DNA of 64,000 nucleotides from IMGVR_UViG_3300009430_000004:154089-218088, one strand, 5' to 3'. Positions 17,745 to 45,269 are shown, counted from the stretch's first letter. A program made the numbers and translations. The notes: generated by a model not told the origin, from the letters alone.

Positions 17745-18917
17745 ATGGGAATAGAATTAAATTCGCAACAAACCGATACAGTTGATAGATTAGTTAAATG
17801 GTGGCATAGTAGAGATAAACAAACCTTTGAGATATCAGGACCTGCTGGTTCTGGTAAGACTACATTGGTTTATTATCTAATTGAGCGAATAGGGATAGAC
17901 CCTAAAAAAGTATTATTTATGGCTTATGTTGGCAAGGCAACAATGGCACTTGCTAGAAAAGGAAATTTTGCTAAGACTATACATAGCACTATTTATAGAT
18001 TAGTTGAAGTTCCTAAACTAGATAATGAAGGAAATCCTATAAAGAAAAATAATAGGGTTGTAACAACAACTGTTTTTCAGAAGAAGGATAAGATAGATGA
18101 TGATATACAGGCGTTAGTTATTGATGAGGGTTCTATGGTAAATAAACAGATAGCTGAGGATATACTTAGCTTTAATTTGCCAATAATTGTACTAGGAGAC
18201 CTAAACCAGCTACCCCCTGTATTCGGAGACTCTTATTTCTTACAAAAACCTGATAGTGTACTTACTCAAGTTATGAGACAGATGGAAAATGACCCAATAG
18301 TACATTTAAGTCAGAGAGCTATAAGAGGAGAATATCTAAACATAGGTAAATATGGACCTATGTGTTTTGTTATTGATAAGGAAGTTATCAATGATAATTT
18401 ATTAATTAAGTCTGATATAGTTATCTGTGGAAAAAATAAAACAAGAGAAGATATCAATAACTATGTAAGACGACAAATTAAAGGAATTAAATCTGACATA
18501 CCAGTTATGGGAGAAAAACTTATATGTAGACAGAATAACTGGAACCTATCTGTTGGAGGGGATATATTCCTCATAAACGGTTTAATAGGTTATATGGAGG
18601 GTATCTATCTTGATACCTATAATAAGAAGTCTATTTGCATAGATTTCAGACCAGAGTTTATGGAAGATGACTACTTTGAGAAGATACCAATGGACTATGA
18701 ATACTTATTCCAGACTTATGAGGAAAAAAAACGAGGCAAGAGAAGTTACTATAATAAGTTTGAATTTGCATATGCCATTACTGCACACTTAGCACAAGGT
18801 TCGCAGTATGATAAAGTAATGATATATGACGAAAGAATAGGTGACAGAGATTACTATAGGAAATGGTTGTACACAGCCATAACTAGGGCTGTTAAAGGAT
18901 TAGTAGTAGCTGTATAA
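17745..18917 (+). CDS. SF1B helicase (RecD/Dda-like)
   Basis: GPAGSGKTT, IDEGSM, GDLNQLPPV, AYAITAHLAQGSQY, YTAITRA motifs. Confidence 0.9.
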   Translation: MGIELNSQQTDTVDRLVKWWHSRDKQTFEISGPAGSGKTTLVYYLIERIGIDPKKVLFMAYVGKATMALARKGNFAKTIHSTIYRLVEVPKLDNEGNPIKKNNRVVTTTVFQKKDKIDDDIQALVIDEGSMVNKQIAEDILSFNLPIIVLGDLNQLPPVFGDSYFLQKPDSVLTQVMRQMENDPIVHLSQRAIRGEYLNIGKYGPMCFVIDKEVINDNLLIKSDIVICGKNKTREDINNYVRRQIKGIKSDIPVMGEKLICRQNNWNLSVGGDIFLINGLIGYMEGIYLDTYNKKSICIDFRPEFMEDDYFEKIPMDYEYLFQTYEEKKRGKRSYYNKFEFAYAITAHLAQGSQYDKVMIYDERIGDRDYYRKWLYTAITRAVKGLVVAV

Positions 18918-19029
18918 AAAAAATAATATGCGGGAGGTCTATCTATCCAGATATAACCTCCCTCTTCCTTAGGGTAATTGATAATTAGACTATATTTTTT
19001 AGTGTCTCAATTATCATTTATGTGTATAC
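18916..19029 (-). ncRNA. Candidate early small RNA (~110 nt)
   Basis: CGTA-N17-TATATATTAT-N6-GTA promoter, 12-bp hairpin, terminator with T-tract only on this strand, no RBS-led ORF. Confidence 0.5.
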
Positions 19030-19066
19030 ACAATTATAATATATATCTGTGTTGGACTACTTTACG
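19027..19066 (-). promoter_or_regulatory. CGTA-N17-TATATATTAT-N6-GTA promoter
   Basis: ATAATATATA 19036-45, TACG 19063-66. Confidence 0.7.
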
Positions 19067-28216: not shown

Positions 28217-28244
28217 TAATTTATTGTTTTAAAACAATTAAATA
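28217..28244. promoter_or_regulatory. Back-to-back late promoters sharing a 16-bp palindrome
   Basis: ATTGTTTTAAAACAAT; AACA-N6-TA on both strands. Confidence 0.75.
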
Positions 28245-28270: not shown

Positions 28271-29431
28271 ATGGCAAATGATAGAGTATTATTAAATGAA
28301 TTATACCCTTTAATAGAGAAGGGTCTATCCAAAAAAGAAAATACCCAGAAGCTTAAGCTGGCTGTAAGCCAATTCCTTGATAGGAACAATGAAAAATTAA
28401 CCACTAATGGTCCAGTATATAGAATTATATTCTCAGAAGAGGATGCTAATAAACTATACGAAGCTATAGAAGTTGACCCGCTTACAATCAAGGGAATAAT
28501 TAATAGGTCACCGACAATTAAGAGTCAGTGGCAGATAATGAATAATCCTTTCAACTCTGCAATAGCCTTGACTATTAGATATTATAAGGTTAACAAGAAC
28601 CCTGAAATGGTTAATGCAACGCTTATATATTTAACAATGTCAATGTATCCATCATTACACTATAAGTATTTTCAATATGAACCTAATGAAAATATAATGA
28701 ATTATACCATCAATAATCTATCAAATAAGTTTAAAATCAAACAAACTGGTACAATTTATGCTGCCTTAGTAGATACTGTACAAGTTAGTGATAGGACTTA
28801 TACTGACGATTTGATACGTGGTACTGATAAGGATATCGTTGACTATATCGAAGCAGTTAAGACAAGAATGAATAGTTTGCTTAGAAAAATATCAAATGAA
28901 TTTTATGAGAATGATAAAAAAAAGAATTATCTTAATACTGAAAGCGATAGCTTCGAAGAAGATAATTATCATGAAGCTGATAGCAATATCTACGCTGTGG
29001 AACGTGTTACTAACAATGTCGTCCTAAAACTTATAGTTAATGGACCAAATATACAGCTAGTTAATATTGCGGCTAAAATGAGCCAAGTAAGTGTTAGTGA
29101 ACTGAGGAATTATGTTAATACCTTGGTTATCGGGGAGAATCGTGAACAAATTAAGACTGTTGTTGAATGTATTTTATTCTTATATTTATTTGATTCACAG
29201 AACAAAGTTGAGGATATAGGAAGCAATAAATTCCTATTCTATTGTCTTGAAGTATATAAGAAATCTAATACTACAGACGAGAATATCATAAAGATTAAGA
29301 AGATTCTTGATGAATGGTTGGAAGACTTAGGAACATACAAAAAAACTCAGAGACTTGCTACTATCAATAATTTTAGAAGGGCTTTGTTTACCTTCTTCGT
29401 TCTAAGTATTCAACATACGGGAAATAGCTAG
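28271..29431 (+). CDS. Late all-alpha protein of unknown function
   Basis: 386 aa, AAAGGGG RBS, late promoter. Confidence 0.6.
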   Translation: MANDRVLLNELYPLIEKGLSKKENTQKLKLAVSQFLDRNNEKLTTNGPVYRIIFSEEDANKLYEAIEVDPLTIKGIINRSPTIKSQWQIMNNPFNSAIALTIRYYKVNKNPEMVNATLIYLTMSMYPSLHYKYFQYEPNENIMNYTINNLSNKFKIKQTGTIYAALVDTVQVSDRTYTDDLIRGTDKDIVDYIEAVKTRMNSLLRKISNEFYENDKKKNYLNTESDSFEEDNYHEADSNIYAVERVTNNVVLKLIVNGPNIQLVNIAAKMSQVSVSELRNYVNTLVIGENREQIKTVVECILFLYLFDSQNKVEDIGSNKFLFYCLEVYKKSNTTDENIIKIKKILDEWLEDLGTYKKTQRLATINNFRRALFTFFVLSIQHTGNS

Positions 29432-29595
29432 AAAAAAAAGCGGGGTCAGAGATAAAAGCATAAAGCCTGGCGTATAGCCCCCCATTGACCCCCCCATCAT
29501 GTGGGAAATTAAACCATGTAAACCATGGATGATGGCTGTTTAAATAGTCACCACATTATCATTTCCCAAGGAATTGACATATTATATATACACAC
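29432..29595 (-). ncRNA. Candidate early structured RNA (~160 nt)
   Basis: CGTA-class promoter, multiple stems, GGGGUCA/UGACCCC terminal stem plus U8. Confidence 0.55.
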
Positions 29596-29632
29596 ATGAT
29601 AATAATATATATTTTATTAGTGTGACTTTACG
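29593..29632 (-). promoter_or_regulatory. CGTA-N17-TATATATTAT-N6-GTG promoter
   Basis: ATAATATATA 29602-11, TACG 29629-32. Confidence 0.7.
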
Positions 29633-29638
29633 AATTAT

Positions 29639-29680
29639 AAAAAAATAAGGAAGATGATTAATTTCATCTTCCTTATTTTT
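29639..29680 (-). terminator. AATAAGG-family terminator
   Basis: AAAAATAAGGAAGATGA / TCATCTTCCTTATTTTT. Confidence 0.75.
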
Positions 29681-30212
29681 CTAACTCATTTATTAACTTA
29701 TTCATTATAACAGTATTACTTATATATCGTAATACAGTTGGATCATTACTTAATGCCTGCCTGCATATATCTTCAGTTTGAATCTTGCAGAATTGTAATG
29801 CTCTAGGAGTTTTCTTAACAGCTTCCATGCATATTTCTTCAGTCTGTTCTTTTACAAATTGTAATGCAGTACCATTCTGCCTAACAGCTTCTATACACAG
29901 CTCATGAGTTTGGTTATCCTTTATCATATTAAGTATCCTACCATTACGCTTAACAGCTTCAAGCTTCATTTCATATGTAGGATTCATTATAAACTGATAT
30001 GACAAAGGATTGTTTCTAATAGCCATTAGACATAATTCCTCAGTTTGGCTTTTAACATATTCCAAGGCATCACCATTCTGTGTAATGGCTACACGACATG
30101 CTTCCTCAGTTTGTGGACTAAAATACCTCAATAACAATCCGTCACGCCTTAAATCGTCAATAATAACAGATGGTAAATGATAGTGGTTTCCTCTCATAGC
30201 AAATTCTCCCAT
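29673..30212 (-). CDS. DUF4116-like repeat protein
   Basis: Five ~24-aa repeats of EE(L/I)C.EAV..NG.AL.(Y/F)VK.QT. Confidence 0.75.
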   Translation of the reverse strand: MGEFAMRGNHYHLPSVIIDDLRRDGLLLRYFSPQTEEACRVAITQNGDALEYVKSQTEELCLMAIRNNPLSYQFIMNPTYEMKLEAVKRNGRILNMIKDNQTHELCIEAVRQNGTALQFVKEQTEEICMEAVKKTPRALQFCKIQTEDICRQALSNDPTVLRYISNTVIMNKLINELEK

Positions 30213-30281: not shown

Positions 30282-30325
30282 AAAAAAATAAGGATGGTGT
30301 AAAACCATCCTTATTTTCTTTTTTT
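30282..30325 (-). terminator. AATAAGG-family terminator
   Basis: AAAATAAGGATGGT / ACCATCCTTATTTT. Confidence 0.75.
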
Positions 30326-31374: not shown

Positions 31375-32094
31375 ATGGCTATAACAAAACAAACTAGAAA
31401 ACAAATGGAAGCCTTAATATATTCCGTTTTCGATGCTCTCGACCCTTCCAAAACAAATAGTAATAAATACAAGGATTTCTTCGGGGAAATGTCGGATTCA
31501 CAGTTCGATTCATTTTTTAGAAATTTCTTTAAGGATGAAAATCAGTATTTAACTCTTGATGTTGTGGATTATGAGAGAGATTTTAAGATTGAAAATGTTG
31601 AGCAAGCAGCTAAGATACTTGGGGTTCCATTATTTGAGAAAGTAGTTATGCCATTTGTTAATAAAAATACAGATAAACCAGTCATTACTAAATATGAAGT
31701 ACCTGTGGGATATGTGCATGTTAAGAGGGTTCAGCAGATGCTCAGTAAGAAGAACACTACTTCTACTGAAATAGCTTCCCGTTCAGCATTAACAGGACAG
31801 GTTGTTGGAAAGGATAAGAATGCAAGAGACTCTGATGCTGAAAACTTCGCATTAGTTACGCTTAATGCTAATGAGACATTAAGAGAGTTTATGGGTCCAA
31901 GAGCTGACGACTTAGTAATGAAGAATGAAATGTACGCTTCAATAGCACAAAAGGGATATGTTTCCCTAGACCAATTAACTAACCATGTTGAAAATAAGAC
32001 TACTTTAAATGCCCTCGATGTACATCTAATAGGTATGGGTATTAAGTCAGACCTTGTTACTCAAGGATTATTGGTTAAGAAATCACTAAAATAA
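31375..32094 (+). CDS. RNA polymerase beta C-terminal fragment, probably virion RNAP
   Basis: VPVGYVHVKRVQQ, RS.LTGQ, R.SDAENFAL, LREFMGPRADD match the beta clamp region; only a late promoter upstream. Confidence 0.75.
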   Translation: MAITKQTRKQMEALIYSVFDALDPSKTNSNKYKDFFGEMSDSQFDSFFRNFFKDENQYLTLDVVDYERDFKIENVEQAAKILGVPLFEKVVMPFVNKNTDKPVITKYEVPVGYVHVKRVQQMLSKKNTTSTEIASRSALTGQVVGKDKNARDSDAENFALVTLNANETLREFMGPRADDLVMKNEMYASIAQKGYVSLDQLTNHVENKTTLNALDVHLIGMGIKSDLVTQGLLVKKSLK

Positions 32095-32476: not shown

Positions 32477-33064
32477 TTAACCGTAAACTATAATGCCTTT
32501 TTTGGTACTGATACATCCAGTTAACCAACCAAAGGAATCTTGTTCACCTGCAAATACTCTATAACCTGCTCCTTCGACCTTCTTAATATTGGTCCAATTA
32601 CATCTTCCATTACTGGATATCAATGCACCGCAAGCTAACCCATCTATAATACGAGCAGCATCATCCTCATTATCACTATTCATGTCAATATATAATCGAC
32701 CTTCATAGTCATATGACTTAACTTCAGATTCACCAGATTCAACTTTCTTGAGCATGTCAAGAAGTTCTGTCAAGTAATCCTTAGTTTCTGGATGTATCTT
32801 CTCTTCAAGAGGTGAAGGGTAATTATCAAAATGTCTCCAACCGAGACTGAGTAAGTATTCAAAAGCTTCAGCATTTCTATTACTGCTGAAATCTGAAACA
32901 GTCATTGAGATTTTGCTATAATCTGTTCTAACATTGAAAGTCTTAGCTTCCTCATCCTTTTGTCCGAGTTCTTTCCTTGTTAGGTTAACTCCATCAAAAG
33001 ATACAATCTCAAGAATGCTACCCATATAGGTTTTAATAAAAACTGGTTTTTCTAATCTTATCAT
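32477..33064 (-). CDS. Hypothetical protein
   Basis: 195 aa, GGGAGG RBS, CGTA-class promoter; C-terminal GEQDSFGWLTGCI motif. Confidence 0.6.
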   Translation of the reverse strand: MIRLEKPVFIKTYMGSILEIVSFDGVNLTRKELGQKDEEAKTFNVRTDYSKISMTVSDFSSNRNAEAFEYLLSLGWRHFDNYPSPLEEKIHPETKDYLTELLDMLKKVESGESEVKSYDYEGRLYIDMNSDNEDDAARIIDGLACGALISSNGRCNWTNIKKVEGAGYRVFAGEQDSFGWLTGCISTKKGIIVYG

Positions 33065-33150
33065 GATTTAATTCCTCCCACAGAATCAAAATATTTTTCA
33101 CTAGCATCTATATTTACTAGCGGAACATACAAATATATTATCTACGTATG

Positions 33151-33190
33151 TACACAATAATAATATATATTCATCATGTTTTAATTTACG
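33151..33190 (-). promoter_or_regulatory. CGTA-N17-TATATATTAT-N6-GTA promoter
   Basis: ATAATATATA 33160-69, TACG 33187-90. Confidence 0.7.
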
Positions 33191-40556: not shown

Positions 40557-40587
40557 CGTATTTACTCGATTATCAAATATATATTAT
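40557..40587 (+). promoter_or_regulatory. CGTA-N17-TATATATTAT promoter
   Basis: CGTA 40557-60, TATATATTAT 40578-87. Confidence 0.7.
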
Positions 40588-40636
40588 TATTGTAGATATA
40601 CATAAGATATGGGATTATGTGTATTGAATATATTCT

Positions 40637-41209: not shown

Positions 41210-41229
41210 TTGAAAGGGTGGGAAATTAA

Positions 41230-42360
41230 ATGAATAAGAAAGTAAACCAAATCAGACCAACAAGAGTTATAGAGGTAGTTGAGCTAATCGAGAAAATCCG
41301 TGCAGAACATCCAACAGCAACATTGAGAAATGTATTCCAGTTGCTTAAATCAGGTAAGGCATATTCCAGATTGAATGATTATGAAAAGAAGAAAATTTGG
41401 GACGAGCCAGATATCACCGCTGCCTTACAAGTGTTTGTCAATAACTCCAATGAAGATGATAAACAACTTTTTGAAAAATCTTCAGATATGAATGAAACTG
41501 TTGACAGGATCATTGGAGACATAATGGCTGGTAAGACTTATAATTCTTCTGAAGGAGATAACGAAGAGTTGGAAACTGACAAAAATAAAGGAGAAGACGA
41601 AAACATGGAAAATTATATTAAGAAAACTGGCGAAGACACAACTCCAAAAAATATTGAAGAATACTTTAAAAGTGAAAGTGGGGAAGAAGCTATGAAAACC
41701 GAGCAAACTGGAACTAAAGGTGAAGAAAATAAATCTGAAAAGACATCACCTAAGAAATATAACGGCAAAGCCTTCATATTCAAATATAAGAAAGCAGTTG
41801 ACCTAAATGAGACTATAGAAGTCTCAATCGGAGACAAAGATGGGAACAAAGAAAGCAACAAAGATGAAAATTGGAAAACAATTGAAGGTGTTGAATACGA
41901 AACTAAAGACGGGGCTGAAGCTGGTGAAAAGAAATCTGGGATAGTAGTTGAGTTTGTTAAGAAACTTAAGATGCTACAAGAAAAGGAATCAGAATCTTTT
42001 ACAAAGCTTGTTAATATAATCAAAGAAAAGAAGAGCCTTGATCTGGATGATCTTATAGAAGAAATGGATATGAGATTATTCGGTTTGATTGGTGTAATCA
42101 TGGCGTTTGCTAGTAAGTCCAATGTTGAAAAGCATCAAATAGCACAGTACATAGTATGTACTGCTGAAGGGCTATATGATTATGCAGTTTATGAATCTGA
42201 TGTTACAGGTACTGATATAGTAGTTTCGGGTAATGTTATTCCTTTCAAGAAGAAGGAAGAAATAGTTACTAAAAAGACGGAAGACTATAGCCATATACAT
42301 TTTCCAAGTGTAAAAACTAAACTTGAAGGGATGGCTAAGAGAAGAGCATTATTCGGTTAA
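41230..42360 (+). CDS. Hypothetical protein with acidic low-complexity centre
   Basis: 376 aa, GAAAGGGTGGG RBS. Confidence 0.65.
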   Translation: MNKKVNQIRPTRVIEVVELIEKIRAEHPTATLRNVFQLLKSGKAYSRLNDYEKKKIWDEPDITAALQVFVNNSNEDDKQLFEKSSDMNETVDRIIGDIMAGKTYNSSEGDNEELETDKNKGEDENMENYIKKTGEDTTPKNIEEYFKSESGEEAMKTEQTGTKGEENKSEKTSPKKYNGKAFIFKYKKAVDLNETIEVSIGDKDGNKESNKDENWKTIEGVEYETKDGAEAGEKKSGIVVEFVKKLKMLQEKESESFTKLVNIIKEKKSLDLDDLIEEMDMRLFGLIGVIMAFASKSNVEKHQIAQYIVCTAEGLYDYAVYESDVTGTDIVVSGNVIPFKKKEEIVTKKTEDYSHIHFPSVKTKLEGMAKRRALFG

Positions 42361-43184: not shown

Positions 43185-45269
43185 ATGATGGATAAAGACA
43201 TGCTAATTGGAGCATTGTCCACGATATATCTAACTATTGAAGAGAAAGATGATTATGCTAAAGCAATAGAAATGTTAAATGCCATGAAAATAAATAGTTT
43301 AGTTAATTATTATATTAACGTGGCTGAAGAGTATGATGAACAAGATTCTGTTATCATACAACAAATCATATGGATACTCCAAGCAATATATAATAATAGT
43401 GGGGAGATATCTCCTGTGACGGATGAAGATTATGATAAGATATATGAAATAAATAGGACATTTACTGGTGAAGAAATAGTAGGTTCCTTTAATGCTTCAG
43501 ATAGAAATATATCTAATCATAAGTATCCTGATTTAAGAGGAACCTTAGATAAGGTTCATTTTATTACCCTCGAAGATAAGGGTAAAGATAAAAGAAAGTC
43601 AATCCCAGAATGGAGAAAAGCAGTAGAAAATAAACTGGGGCGACCTTTAACCGATGATGAATGTCAAATGTATGCATTTCCTAAATTTGATGGTTTATCT
43701 GAAATATTTGAGTGTGATAATACTGGATTAGTCGAGAAAGTATTGTCGAGGGGAGATACAGATAAGAACGAAGCTGTTGATACCACTAAATTATTTAAGG
43801 GAACTAAATTCAGTATGATTGAAGGATGGAATTCACCTTATGGAATAAAGACAGAGGTTGTAATGTCAGAAGATAATTATAATGAACTCTGTTCTAAGGA
43901 AGGTGACTTTAAGAGTCCAAGAAGTGCAGTATCGTCCATATTGAATTCAAAGGAACTTGATAGGAAGTATCTAAAATATCTGACTGTAGTTCCATTACAG
44001 ATTCAGAATTATGATACTAAGCAAATAATAGTGGCACCATCAATGTTTCAACAATATCCATGGAGTCTAATAAATCTTAATGATGAAGACCATATGAGAG
44101 AAACCTTTAATGGTATAAAGAAAAAGATGGAAACAGAATATGGTGTACCTATAGACGGTATAGTTTTAAGATTTAAGAATACAAATCTTCATACTGTGTT
44201 AGGACGAGATGGTGCAATTAATAAATATGAGGTTGCATTTAAGTTTCCACCAGAGCAGAAGAAAACCATATTAAAGGATATAGACTTCTCAGTAGGTATC
44301 CTTGGAGGGGTTACCCCTGTTGCTAAAATAGAACCTGTTAAAATTAAAGGTAATACAATCAAAAGTATTAGCTTAGGTTCTATTGATAGATTTGAAAGCT
44401 TTGAATTCAGAGTTGGAGATGAGGTAATTGTAAAATATGATATTATACCTTATCTGACAAAAGATGAAACATGTAAACCTGGGATTGGAAAGAAATTTGA
44501 AACTCCTAAAGAATGTCCATTTTGTCATGAGGAGTTAAAGAAAGACCCTGTGTTAAAATGTGTTAATCTAAATTGTGAATCTAGAGCTATAGGTAAGATT
44601 CTTAATTATGTAGAAAAGATGAGAATCGCTAATATATCTATTGGTATAATAACAACCCTATTCAAGGCAGGTTATTTAAAGTCTATCGAAGACTTATATA
44701 AACTGGAAAAACATAAGAGGTCTATTGTTATGATGGACGGATTCGGTGAAACATCTTTCAATAAGATTATTGCAGGTGTAGATTCGAGAAGAGATGTATA
44801 TGACTATGAATTTATGGGGTCATTAGGTATCCCAGATATCGGTCGCAAAATGTTTAAAAAGATTTCAAATATATATTATCTAGATGAGTTAATACAGATA
44901 TGTATTAATGACAAGGCTGAAAAGCTTACTGCGATAGGAGGTATAAAGAAGAAGACAGCTAATAAAATTATAGAAGGTGTAAACCTTAATAAAGATTTAA
45001 TTACATTTCTACGTTCCGAGTTAAAAATTAGGAGGGATGAACGAAGATATACAATCAAAGTGTACTTCACAAAAGTGAGGGATAAAGAATTTGCAAAGTA
45101 TCTTGAAAGTAAAGATGTCTTAATAATGGAAAGCTATAACAATGAAGTTGATTTGTTAATCATTCCAGACAGAAATACTGAATCAAGTAAAATAACTAAG
45201 GCTCAAAAAGCTAATAAGGAAATCGTCACAATTGACGAGGCTTATAAGATGTTCGGTTATAACCAGTAA
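43185..45269 (+). CDS. ligA: NAD-dependent DNA ligase
   Basis: KFDG adenylation motif, DGIV, AFKFP, OB fold, CPFC..C...C Zn finger, BRCT tail. Confidence 0.92.
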   Translation: MMDKDMLIGALSTIYLTIEEKDDYAKAIEMLNAMKINSLVNYYINVAEEYDEQDSVIIQQIIWILQAIYNNSGEISPVTDEDYDKIYEINRTFTGEEIVGSFNASDRNISNHKYPDLRGTLDKVHFITLEDKGKDKRKSIPEWRKAVENKLGRPLTDDECQMYAFPKFDGLSEIFECDNTGLVEKVLSRGDTDKNEAVDTTKLFKGTKFSMIEGWNSPYGIKTEVVMSEDNYNELCSKEGDFKSPRSAVSSILNSKELDRKYLKYLTVVPLQIQNYDTKQIIVAPSMFQQYPWSLINLNDEDHMRETFNGIKKKMETEYGVPIDGIVLRFKNTNLHTVLGRDGAINKYEVAFKFPPEQKKTILKDIDFSVGILGGVTPVAKIEPVKIKGNTIKSISLGSIDRFESFEFRVGDEVIVKYDIIPYLTKDETCKPGIGKKFETPKECPFCHEELKKDPVLKCVNLNCESRAIGKILNYVEKMRIANISIGIITTLFKAGYLKSIEDLYKLEKHKRSIVMMDGFGETSFNKIIAGVDSRRDVYDYEFMGSLGIPDIGRKMFKKISNIYYLDELIQICINDKAEKLTAIGGIKKKTANKIIEGVNLNKDLITFLRSELKIRRDERRYTIKVYFTKVRDKEFAKYLESKDVLIMESYNNEVDLLIIPDRNTESSKITKAQKANKEIVTIDEAYKMFGYNQ

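What the first reader, a model, noticed from the sequence alone, without database searches (positions are those of the whole stretch)
29432..29632. Immediate-early ~160-nt structured RNA with alternative pairings and G-tracts
Seen: a CGTA-class promoter points leftward into a gap with no RBS-led ORF (only a 10-codon MSIPWEMIMW). The transcript has unusually GC-rich tracts (G7, G6), a GGGGUCA/UGACCCC terminal stem followed by U8, and a CCAUG/CAUGG hairpin. It also has competing helices: AUUUCCCACAU can pair with GGGAAAU or AUGUGG, and CCAUCAU pairs with AUGAUGG. Inference: a switchable sRNA or protein-decoy RNA (for example an anti-defence sponge or antitoxin mimic) made in the first minutes of infection.
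Basis: partly seen in the sequence, partly recalled or inferred. Interest (0 to 1): 0.8.

Follow-up and report, generated by a model that had tools for sequence, protein, structure and literature searches.

The report
Early small RNA of jumbo phage
A giant bacterial virus related to Bacillus phage AR9 carries a short non-coding RNA gene, switched on at the start of infection and kept in several distant relatives, whose conserved C-rich stretch matches the ribosome-landing sites of a few of the virus's own early genes, so it probably acts as a small regulatory RNA rather than a protein decoy.

Summary
The sequence features are real. On the minus strand, a bipartite promoter (CGTA-N17-TATATATTAT) matches the experimentally defined AR9 early, virion-RNA-polymerase consensus AAATATATATTAT-N6-G exactly. 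It predicts a start at 29595. A GC-rich hairpin plus U8 ends the transcript at 29432, giving about 164 nt with no SD-led ORF.

No Rfam family, tRNA or INPHARED phage DNA matches it, and no RNA run could be found.

The decisive evidence is comparative. Five diverged metagenomic relatives (61-73% aa identity in the neighbouring late gene, synonymous sites saturated) keep the same unit in the same slot: early promoter, short ORF-less RNA, terminator against the late gene's stop codon. They share a C-rich core (UCCCAC in four of six). That core is predicted unpaired in four of six RNAs.

In this phage the core region pairs with the SD-to-AUG region of at least three early genes. Two of these carry an identical 26-nt initiation region. 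In relative L176 the cognate RNA pairs with the equivalent early gene, with a compensating change.

Best reading (about 0.5): a trans-acting early sRNA that occludes ribosome binding on selected early phage mRNAs. The G-tracts, the alternative helices and overall fold stability are window-specific or not significant. I found no support for a decoy, sponge or antitoxin role.

The parts
29641..29685 (.). Bidirectional hairpin terminator that ends the upstream DUF4116 gene (29673-30212, minus strand). It probably also ends read-through of the plus-strand late gene.
   Evidence: Sequence. The hairpin has A/T runs on both sides. The weak miRNA-model hits simply reflect this hairpin.
29629..29632 (-). 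CGTA upstream promoter element, 17 nt before TATATATTAT.
   Evidence: CGTA-N17-TATATATTAT: 7 matches in the window against 0.00 expected. A CGTA also lies about 18-19 nt upstream of the 13-nt core at the two annotated AR9 early promoters inspected.
29602..29614 (-). Early (virion RNAP) promoter core AAATATATATTAT.
   Evidence: Perfect match to the AR9 early consensus AAATATATATTAT-N6-G(+1) defined by dRNA-seq and primer extension (PMC5312081). Six perfect copies in the window against 0.04 expected.
29432..29595 (-). Predicted ~164-nt early non-coding RNA, from +1 at G29595 to the end of the U8 tract.
   Evidence: Promoter spacing rule. No SD-led closed ORF. No Rfam or tRNA hit. Positional homologues in L174/L031, L030, L176, L177 and L186.
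29500..29518 (-). Conserved core and predicted seed: CAUGGUUUAAUUUCCCACA, with the family core UCCCAC at 29501-29506.
   Evidence: 11-mers shared with at most 1 mismatch by W, L176 and L177: 3 observed, 0 of 1000 shuffles reach this. Synonymous sites of the neighbouring gene are saturated. The segment is complementary to early-gene TIRs.
29555..29567 (-). Window-specific 5' anti-seed segments GGGAAAU and AUGUGG (RNA positions 29-45; together they span 29551-29567) that can sequester the core.
   Evidence: Constrained folds of -41.8, -43.7 and -41.2 kcal/mol. Core unpaired probability is 0.33 in W against 0.83-0.99 in four relatives. These segments are not present in the relatives.
29432..29493 (-). 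Intrinsic terminator: GGGGUCA...UGACCCC stem enclosing two small hairpins, then GC and U8. The G7 and G6 tracts lie in and next to its 5' arm. It abuts the stop codon of (+)28271-29431.
   Evidence: Fold. Every stand-alone member except L186 has a hairpin plus U-run at the same place, but of unrelated sequence.
33062..33082 (-). Predicted target 1: TIR UGUGGGAGGAAUUAAAUCAUG of early gene 32477-33064 (195 aa, no family hit), driven by the CGTA-class early promoter at 33160-33190.
   Evidence: 19 bp with a 2-nt bulge, -24.0 to -25.6 kcal/mol. Best of 88 TIRs in the duplex scan. At most 2 of 2000 shuffles reach it. About -10 kcal/mol after unfolding costs. Promoter.
41218..41232 (+). Predicted target 2: TIR GUGGGAAAUUAAAUG of gene 41230-42360 (376 aa, ORFan), the second gene of the early operon from promoter 40557-40594.
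   Evidence: 13 contiguous perfect base pairs with the core. Best of 88 TIRs when unfolding cost is included (-15.0 against a median of -6.5). 0 of 2000 shuffles. No homologue at E<=1e-10 among about 5.8 billion proteins.
28233..28244 (+). Late-type promoter AACA-N6-TA in front of the convergent gene 28271-29431 (AR9 g052 homologue).
   Evidence: Sequence. AR9 late consensus. AR9 g052 is late, with expression of 0.26, 9.6 and 210 at 5, 20 and 40 min.

Best explanation
The locus encodes a roughly 160-nt trans-acting small regulatory RNA of an AR9/PBS1-like jumbo phage.

Proposed mechanism:
1. The injected virion RNA polymerase transcribes it from a consensus early promoter in the first minutes of infection (inferred from the promoter match).
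2. The RNA ends at an intrinsic terminator (inferred).
3. Its conserved, mostly single-stranded C-rich core (UCCCAC) and the adjacent A/U-rich stretch base-pair with the Shine-Dalgarno-to-AUG region of a small set of the phage's own early mRNAs. These mRNAs share a UGUGGGAGGAAUUA-type initiation region.
4. Pairing blocks ribosome binding, and so limits or shortens production of those early proteins. This last step is inferred from the predicted duplexes only.

In the window's copy, a 5' domain can fold back on the core. The late convergent mRNA probably reads through the locus in antisense. Either could modulate the RNA's availability (speculative).
For: Promoter. It is a perfect match to the experimentally defined AR9 early consensus, including the +1 G, and it carries the over-represented CGTA-N17 element. 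In AR9, 33 of 34 promoters predicted from this motif were active.

No coding capacity. There is no SD-led closed ORF in this RNA, and no peptide is shared across the family.

Conservation. The same unit (early promoter, short ORF-less RNA, terminator touching the stop codon of the g052 homologue) occurs in L174/L031, L030, L176, L177 and L186. These phages are 61-73% identical to the window in that protein. Four-fold site identity among the six phages is 0.32-0.51 against 0.39 expected by chance, so neutral sequence should be scrambled. Even so, W, L176 and L177 share 11-13-nt blocks around UUCCCAC (0-1 of 1000 shuffles).

Accessibility. The core is predicted unpaired with P = 0.83-0.99 in L174, L030, L176 and L177.

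Targets in the window.
- The core region gives the two best duplexes of 88 TIRs. Both sit on SD-AUG of genes in early transcription units: 33064(-) at -24.0 and 41230(+) at -19.9 kcal/mol. Only 0.7% of shuffled seeds reach the best value. Per-pair shuffles reach the observed energy in at most 2 of 2000 trials.
- With unfolding costs included, 41230 ranks first of 88.

Targets elsewhere in the same genome. A second early gene (L191:2092-2628) has the identical 26-nt TIR, and a third (L191:5706-6011) has a near copy.

Cross-genome check. In L176 the cognate RNA pairs with the TIR of the positionally equivalent early gene at -21.5 to -23.7 kcal/mol; the next best TIR in that locus is -13.1. The full-length ddG is -19.8 against -11.9 for the next best. 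A compensating difference is present: UUUAAUU:AAUUAAA in W against UUGUU:AACAA in L176. Cognate pairs beat the W/L176 swapped pairs.
Against: - There is no expression evidence. No RNA run was listed, and the DNA contigs showed no variants.
- The host is unknown, so host targets cannot be examined.
- The window RNA's own core is mostly paired in the predicted ensemble (P unpaired 0.33).
- With unfolding costs, the 33064 TIR drops to about -10 kcal/mol, roughly seventh of 88.
- GC-rich segments of the RNA also give low duplex energies with arbitrary sites.
- SD plus an A/U-rich spacer is a generic sequence in this AT-rich genome, so some complementarity to an anti-TIR-like RNA is expected.
- The target proteins in W (195 aa) and L176 (249 aa) are not detectably homologous, and the 376-aa target is an ORFan. 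What is conserved is an initiation region, not a gene.
- Alignment between the W/L176/L177 subgroup and L174/L030 is ambiguous. With all six RNAs, the shared-k-mer test is only marginal (28 of 500).
- Covariation rests on two genomes only.
Confidence: 0.5

Rival explanations
1. Cis-antisense partner of the convergent late mRNA. The late g052-homologue transcript is not stopped by the hairpin in the plus direction, reads through the locus, and forms a perfect duplex with the early RNA. This could process or stabilise the late mRNA, as lambda OOP does, or it could titrate the early RNA late in infection. It may coexist with the trans model.
For: Convergent geometry is conserved in all six members, with the terminator abutting the late gene's stop codon. 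In the plus orientation the hairpin is followed by CCCAUCAUG rather than a U-run, and the next plus-strand terminator is at 29641-29685. The gene is late by promoter and by the AR9 data.
Against: A pure cis-antisense role would not need a conserved primary-sequence core or an unpaired seed. The RNA does not overlap the coding sequence. Read-through by the non-virion RNAP is assumed, not shown.
Confidence: 0.15
2. Protein-binding RNA: a decoy or operator mimic. The UUCCCAC-containing element would be a binding site for a phage or host RNA-binding protein, for example a translational repressor or nuclease. The stand-alone RNA would titrate it.
For: The same core recurs in the 5'UTRs of early mRNAs in relatives that lack the stand-alone RNA (L004, L005 and L026 twice), next to a stem that shows covariation. 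It also occurs in a 3'UTR in L179/L180. That pattern fits a reusable recognition element.
Against: No candidate protein, no repeat array and no known family were found. The extended, compensated complementarity to TIRs is not explained by a protein site.
Confidence: 0.12
3. Relic cassette. The unit would be an early promoter and terminator left after loss of a small accessory gene in a variable early-gene island, with no function of its own.
For: The slot is variable. Some relatives carry a 73-77-aa gene (L179-L181, L184, L185) or a 56-aa membrane gene (L183) there, and others carry nothing (L005, L006, L007, L178, AR9). The window RNA's fold is not significantly stable.
Against: Six lineages with saturated synonymous divergence keep a near-consensus promoter, a terminator (weak in L186) and a shared core. 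In L176 the unit stands alone between two late genes. There is no tblastn trace of the 74-aa gene in the RNA.
Confidence: 0.1
4. Small-peptide gene. Candidates are the 10-aa MSIPWEMIMW, the 5-aa MVYMV, or a hydrophobic 32-aa ORF (29402-29500) acting like a type I toxin.
For: The ORFs exist. MVY-type mini-ORFs appear in W and L176.
Against: None has an SD. The 32-aa ORF runs through the U8 terminator. No peptide is conserved across the six members.
Confidence: 0.03
5. Replication-priming or R-loop transcript. The G7/G6 tracts would form a persistent RNA-DNA hybrid or G-quadruplex, as at ColE1 or the mitochondrial CSBII.
For: G7-N5-G6 on the RNA strand lies just upstream of a termination point.
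Against: The G-tracts are absent from all relatives. No origin-like repeats or skew change were seen locally.
Confidence: 0.03

Closest known systems
UCCC/C-rich-seed base-pairing sRNAs of Firmicutes (S. aureus RNAIII and Rsa RNAs, RsaE/RoxS, Listeria LhrC)
   Same: A short RNA ending in an intrinsic terminator. An unpaired C-rich motif (UCCC...) is predicted to pair with the G-rich SD region and occlude ribosome binding. Background from PMC2790875 and PMC4132741 as listed, and from general knowledge.
   Different: It is phage-encoded and driven by a virion-RNAP early promoter. It has a single core rather than several C-rich loops. The predicted targets are the phage's own early mRNAs. There is no Rfam model match, so it is not a member of those families.
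Phage lambda OOP RNA (short convergent antisense RNA at the 3' end of cII)
   Same: A short RNA from its own promoter, convergent with a neighbouring gene and ending at a strong terminator (general knowledge).
   Different: OOP overlaps the coding 3' end and acts in cis. This RNA stops at the stop codon, and its conserved core points to trans targets.
T4 RegA/RegB control of early mRNAs
   Same: Post-transcriptional down-regulation of a subset of early phage mRNAs at their SD/AUG regions (general knowledge). This is the same logic as proposed here.
   Different: RegA and RegB are proteins. Here the proposed effector is an RNA.
AR9 early transcription units (Lavysh et al. 2017, PMC5312081)
   Same: Identical promoter consensus and +1 rule. 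The neighbouring late gene is homologous to AR9 g052.
   Different: In the 50 kb of AR9 examined, every early promoter leads into a protein gene and the core motif is absent. AR9 has no unit in this slot.
phi29 pRNA (early-promoter-driven structured packaging RNA of a Bacillus phage)
   Same: A non-coding RNA of similar size made from an early promoter of a Firmicute phage (general knowledge).
   Different: No match at Rfam gathering thresholds, and none listed at E<=10 over 29380-29700. The phage lineage and packaging machinery are unrelated.

Membership tests
AR9-type early (virion RNAP) transcription unit | Promoter AAATATATATTAT-N6-G(+1) | tested here: met
   Perfect match at 29614-29595(-). 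Six copies in the window against 0.04 expected.
AR9-type early (virion RNAP) transcription unit | Transcript present at 5 min and independent of protein synthesis | not testable with these tools
   No RNA run was listed for this metagenomic phage.
Trans-acting base-pairing sRNA | Independent promoter and intrinsic terminator, with no translated ORF | tested here: met
   The same architecture occurs in five relatives.
Trans-acting base-pairing sRNA | Conserved, accessible seed | tested here: inconclusive
   The core is conserved and unpaired in four of six members. In the window's own RNA it is mostly paired (P unpaired 0.33).
Trans-acting base-pairing sRNA | Seed-target complementarity kept by compensatory change across genomes | tested here: inconclusive
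   Seen for W against L176.
Trans-acting base-pairing sRNA | Regulation of target translation or stability | not testable with these tools
   Needs reporter or toeprint assays.
RsaE/RoxS, RNAIII, LhrC and other curated sRNA families (Rfam) | Covariance-model match at the gathering score | tested here: not met
   0 matches in the window and in six related loci. Only hairpin noise appeared at E<=10.
Cis-antisense RNA (lambda OOP type) | Overlap with the coding 3' end of the convergent gene | tested here: not met
   The U-tract ends at 29432 and the stop codon ends at 29431. Overlap with a read-through 3'UTR is only inferred.
Type III antitoxin (ToxI-like) or repeat-array decoy RNA | Tandem array of about 30-40-nt repeats next to a toxin gene | tested here: not met
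   The sequence shows only a 2 x 9-nt CAUGGUUUA duplication. The neighbours are a DUF4116 protein and a late virion-type gene.
Riboswitch or transcription attenuator | Regulated gene downstream on the same strand | tested here: not met
   The transcript runs into the 3' end of a convergent gene, and there is no Rfam cis-regulatory hit.
Type I toxin-antitoxin | SD-led small hydrophobic ORF with an overlapping antisense RNA | tested here: not met
   The 32-aa ORF lacks an SD and crosses the terminator. It is not conserved.

The most novel reading that the evidence does not exclude
Jumbo phages of this clade run an RNA-based timer.

- An sRNA made by the injected virion polymerase silences a regulon of the phage's own early genes. 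These genes are marked by a shared, exchangeable initiation-region module: UGUGGGAGGAAUUA, often shown as a GUGGGA hairpin loop.
- Later, antisense read-through from the convergent late gene neutralises the sRNA.
- The same core, reused in the 5' and 3' UTRs of early mRNAs in relatives, would make this a clade-wide post-transcriptional code for early genes.
Probability: 0.2. Interest if true: 0.8.

Novelty: new member of a known kind. Interest (0 to 1): 0.6.

Why it matters
Regulatory RNAs of virulent phages are poorly characterised. For the jumbo phage phiKZ, one predicted sRNA could not be confirmed by Northern blot, and its authors suggested that any phiKZ sRNAs would appear only later in infection (PMC8244752).

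Here the candidate is concrete. It is a conserved family with a defined promoter, a defined 3' end, a seed and named candidate targets. That makes the question 'do jumbo phages use sRNAs to control their early programme?' directly testable.

It also flags a shared initiation-region module on unrelated early genes, which is a handle on how early proteins of unknown function are co-regulated.

Tried and rejected
- Rfam at gathering and at E<=10: nothing beyond hairpin noise. ARAGORN: none.
- BLAST against INPHARED phages, both near and distant modes: no DNA match.
- Sequencing runs: only two groundwater DNA runs and no RNA run. Read laying gave the source contig and no informative variants.
- Exact G-tract motif scan: 7 unrelated contigs, judged coincidental or unexplained.
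- Two promoter-plus-motif scans used a motif I had mis-aligned. They hit only an unrelated conserved coding block and chance sites. Two stricter scans found only the window's own contigs.
- A DUF4116-gene search in IMG/VR found only self.
- tblastn of the 73-74-aa slot genes against the RNA: no remnant.
- An nhmmer profile of the core found no further copies in about 50 related loci.
- The first 50 kb of AR9 has no ORF-less early unit and no core motif. The rest of AR9 was not fetched.
- The second short early RNA in the window (around 19029) shows no outstanding TIR complement.
- The target 376-aa protein has no homologue. Target proteins have no Pfam or PHROG hit.
- MAFFT alignment of all six cores is ambiguous, so I built no covariance model and make no claim of a conserved secondary structure.

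Full report
**What the window is.** The flanking proteins place the window in the AR9/PBS1 group of jumbo phages.
- It has split multisubunit RNAP genes and gyrase genes.
- The gene just left of the finding, (+)28271-29431, is 42% identical to AR9 g052. It is 28% identical to phiR1-37 g205, which one record annotates as a structural protein.
- No INPHARED phage matches at the DNA level.
- The window is identical over the matched gene and the locus to IMG/VR contig 3300009430_000004 (218 kb), and a groundwater metagenome run holds all its sampled words.

**The observation.** The finding lies in the 241-nt gap between two convergent ORFs: (+)28271-29431 and (-)29673-30212, a DUF4116 protein. Reading the minus strand, the order of features is:
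1. A hairpin with U-run at 29685-29641 ends the DUF4116 gene.
2. CGTA follows at 29632-29629.
3. Seventeen bases later comes AAATATATATTAT, at 29614-29602.
4. Six bases after that is G29595.

This is exactly the AR9 early consensus AAATATATATTAT-N6-G(+1). That consensus was defined by dRNA-seq and primer extension and attributed to the injected virion RNAP. In AR9, 33 of 34 promoters predicted from the motif were active (PMC5312081).

In the window the full consensus occurs 6 times against 0.04 expected. The bipartite CGTA-N17-TATATATTAT occurs 7 times against 0.00 expected.

The transcript would run 164 nt to a GGGGUCA...UGACCCC stem followed by GC and U8 (29432-29439). This directly abuts the stop codon of the convergent gene. 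The G7 and G6 tracts, the CCAUG/CAUGG hairpin, the competing helices and the 10-codon ORF are all present.

No ORF in the RNA both has an SD and closes before the terminator.

The RNA as a whole is not more stable than shuffles (z = -0.76). The three alternative conformers lie within 2.5 kcal/mol of each other.

**Related sequences.** Homologues of the neighbouring protein were collected from IMG/VR, JGI, ENA and Logan. I then read the slot downstream of each.

Five diverged lineages hold the same kind of unit on the opposite strand:
- L174 (the same phage as L031 and L175)
- L030
- L176
- L177
- L186

Each has a near-consensus early promoter with a start at G or A. Each gives an RNA of 73-150 nt without a conserved or SD-led ORF, and then a hairpin plus U-run touching the late gene's stop codon. 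The terminator is weak in L186.

Other relatives fill the slot differently:
- a 73-77-aa early gene (L179-L181, L184, L185)
- a 56-aa membrane-protein gene (L183)
- nothing (L005, L006, L007, L178, AR9)

The carriers are scattered over a star-like tree of the neighbouring protein.

Between carriers, amino-acid identity in that protein is 57-73%. Identity at four-fold degenerate sites is 0.32-0.51 against 0.39 expected from composition. Unconstrained sequence should therefore be randomised.

Despite that, the RNAs share a C-rich core: UUUCCCACA (W), AUUCCCACA (L176), UUUCCCACA (L177), AAUCCCACG (L174), AAUUCCACG (L030) and a looser AAUUUCCAU (L186).
- W, L176 and L177 share 11-13-nt blocks around the core that 0-1 of 1000 shuffles reproduce.
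- With all six RNAs and an ungapped statistic, the signal is only marginal (28 of 500).
- The alignment between the two subgroups is ambiguous.
- The core is predicted unpaired with probability 0.83-0.99 in L174, L030, L176 and L177, 0.55 in L186, and 0.33 in the window's RNA.

The G-tracts, the 5' anti-seed domain and the terminator sequences are not shared. No Rfam family matches any member.

**What the core could pair with.** I searched the window for the complement of the conserved core. This gave a 13-nt perfect match, GUGGGAAAUUAAA, that runs from the SD into the AUG of gene 41230-42360. That is the second gene of an operon with a perfect CGTA-class early promoter.

A duplex scan of the core region against 88 SD-led TIRs ranked two sites on top:
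- The TIR of early gene 32477-33064, UGUGGGAGGAAUUAAAUCAUG: 19 bp with a 2-nt bulge, covering SD and AUG, at -24.0 kcal/mol.
- The 41230 TIR, at -19.9 kcal/mol.

Only 0.7% of shuffled seeds reach the best value. Per-pair shuffles of the RNA or the target reach the observed energies in at most 2 of 2000 trials.

When the cost of unfolding both RNAs is included, 41230 remains first of 88 (-15.0 against a median of -6.5). The 33064 site falls to about -10 kcal/mol.

In L176 the cognate RNA pairs with AUGUGGGAGGAACAAAUCAUG. This is the TIR of the first gene of the early operon in the same relative position, convergent with the RNAP-fragment gene.
- The duplex energy is -21.5 to -23.7 kcal/mol; the next best TIR in that locus is -13.1.
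- The full-length ddG is -19.8 against -11.9 for the next best.
- The spacer differs between the two phages in a compensated way: UUUAAUU pairs with AAUUAAA in W, and UUGUU pairs with AACAA in L176.
- Each cognate pair is more stable than the W/L176 swapped pair.

A pattern scan for this TIR in IMG/VR returned only the window's own phage, but at two further places outside the window:
- Early gene L191:2092-2628 (178 aa, multi-TM by inspection) has the identical 26-nt initiation region.
- Early gene L191:5706-6011 has a near copy.

In three of these sites the sequence AAUUNU-GUGGGA-GGAAUU can form a small hairpin that shows GUGGGA in its loop. This rests on sequence inspection and on the target fold.

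The target proteins have no Pfam or PHROG hit. The W and L176 targets are not homologous to each other, and one target is an ORFan.

**Interpretation.** The best-supported reading is a trans-acting early sRNA. Its C-rich core and adjacent A/U stretch occlude the SD-AUG region of a small set of early phage mRNAs that share an initiation-region module.

What is shown:
- the promoter match
- the absence of coding capacity
- positional and sequence conservation against saturated neutral divergence
- statistically unusual complementarity to early-gene TIRs in two genomes

What is inferred:
- that the RNA is made
- that it stops at the hairpin
- that it pairs in vivo and represses

The convergent late gene carries an AACA-N6-TA late promoter at 28233-28244, and AR9 g052 is late. 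Its transcript probably reads through the locus, because in the plus direction the hairpin lacks a U-run. An antisense interaction late in infection is therefore a plausible second layer, or a rival explanation.

The core also appears in the 5'UTRs of early mRNAs in relatives without the stand-alone RNA, next to a covarying stem. It appears in a 3'UTR in L179/L180 as well. This keeps a protein-binding (decoy or operator) reading alive.

The relic, peptide and R-loop readings are less likely, for the reasons given under the rivals.

**Limits.**
- No transcript evidence exists for this uncultured phage.
- The host is unknown.
- TIRs in an AT-rich genome are compositionally similar to one another.
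- Four collection scans were wasted: two on a mis-specified motif, and two stricter ones that returned only the window's own contigs.

**Verdict.** 'Switchable' is possible for this copy only. 'Decoy, sponge or antitoxin mimic' is unsupported. The locus is best filed as a new family of phage-encoded, early-expressed, base-pairing sRNA: a known kind of regulator in a setting where few have been characterised.

Noticed in passing
window 18918-19066 (-): A second CGTA-N17 early promoter gives a roughly 110-nt RNA with no SD-led ORF. It ends at a hairpin plus U8 that abuts the stop codon of the convergent gene 17745-18917. The layout matches the finding, but the sequence differs (it contains CAAUUACCCUAAGG), and there is no outstanding TIR complement.
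   Followed up: partly
L191:2092-2628 (-) and L191:5706-6011 (-) (same phage genome, outside the window); window 33062-33087 (-): Two unrelated early genes share an identical 26-nt translation-initiation region (AUUCUGUGGGAGGAAUUAAAUCAUGA), and a third has a near copy. This looks like an exchangeable leader module.
   Followed up: partly
L004 ~1850, L005 ~2170, L026 ~540 and ~1390: Early mRNAs of relatives carry a 5'UTR element AUUAUUCCCAC-N5-7-GGGGAAAUAA, with a stem (CUAAUAAG/CUUAUUAG and variants) that changes on both sides between copies.
   Followed up: partly
L004, L005, L006/L029 (homologues of window 31375-32094): The RNAP beta-fragment gene is interrupted by roughly 330-1450 nt in these relatives (split tblastn hits), suggesting an intron, an intein or an inserted gene. 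The window's copy is intact.
   Followed up: no
window 29478-29495 and loci L014-L016, L019-L022: The exact 17-mer GGGGGGTCAATGGGGGG recurs in 7 unrelated viral contigs, mostly in AT-rich, apparently non-coding contexts. In L015 a similar G6-N5-G6 unit recurs about 90 nt upstream, and in L014 part of the motif (TCAATGGGGGG) recurs as an inverted repeat. Unexplained.
   Followed up: partly
window 44867-44886 (+): A perfect early-promoter consensus lies inside ORF 43185-45269. It may be an internal early promoter.
   Followed up: no
window 41230-42360 (+): This 376-aa early-operon protein has no homologue at E<=1e-10 among about 5.8 billion proteins, and no Pfam or PHROG hit.
   Followed up: partly
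window 29641-29685 and 30282-30320: Long A/T-flanked hairpins act as bidirectional terminators between early units. Each is followed within about 10-40 nt by the next CGTA-class promoter, giving a regular terminator-promoter cassette structure in the early-gene island.
   Followed up: partly
L054-L173: A mis-specified pattern incidentally hit a 63-nt block conserved in more than 100 small viral contigs. The block appears to be coding (roughly ...FEDIYYVGEVK...QFPHL by my reading of the hits) and is unrelated to this finding.
   Followed up: no
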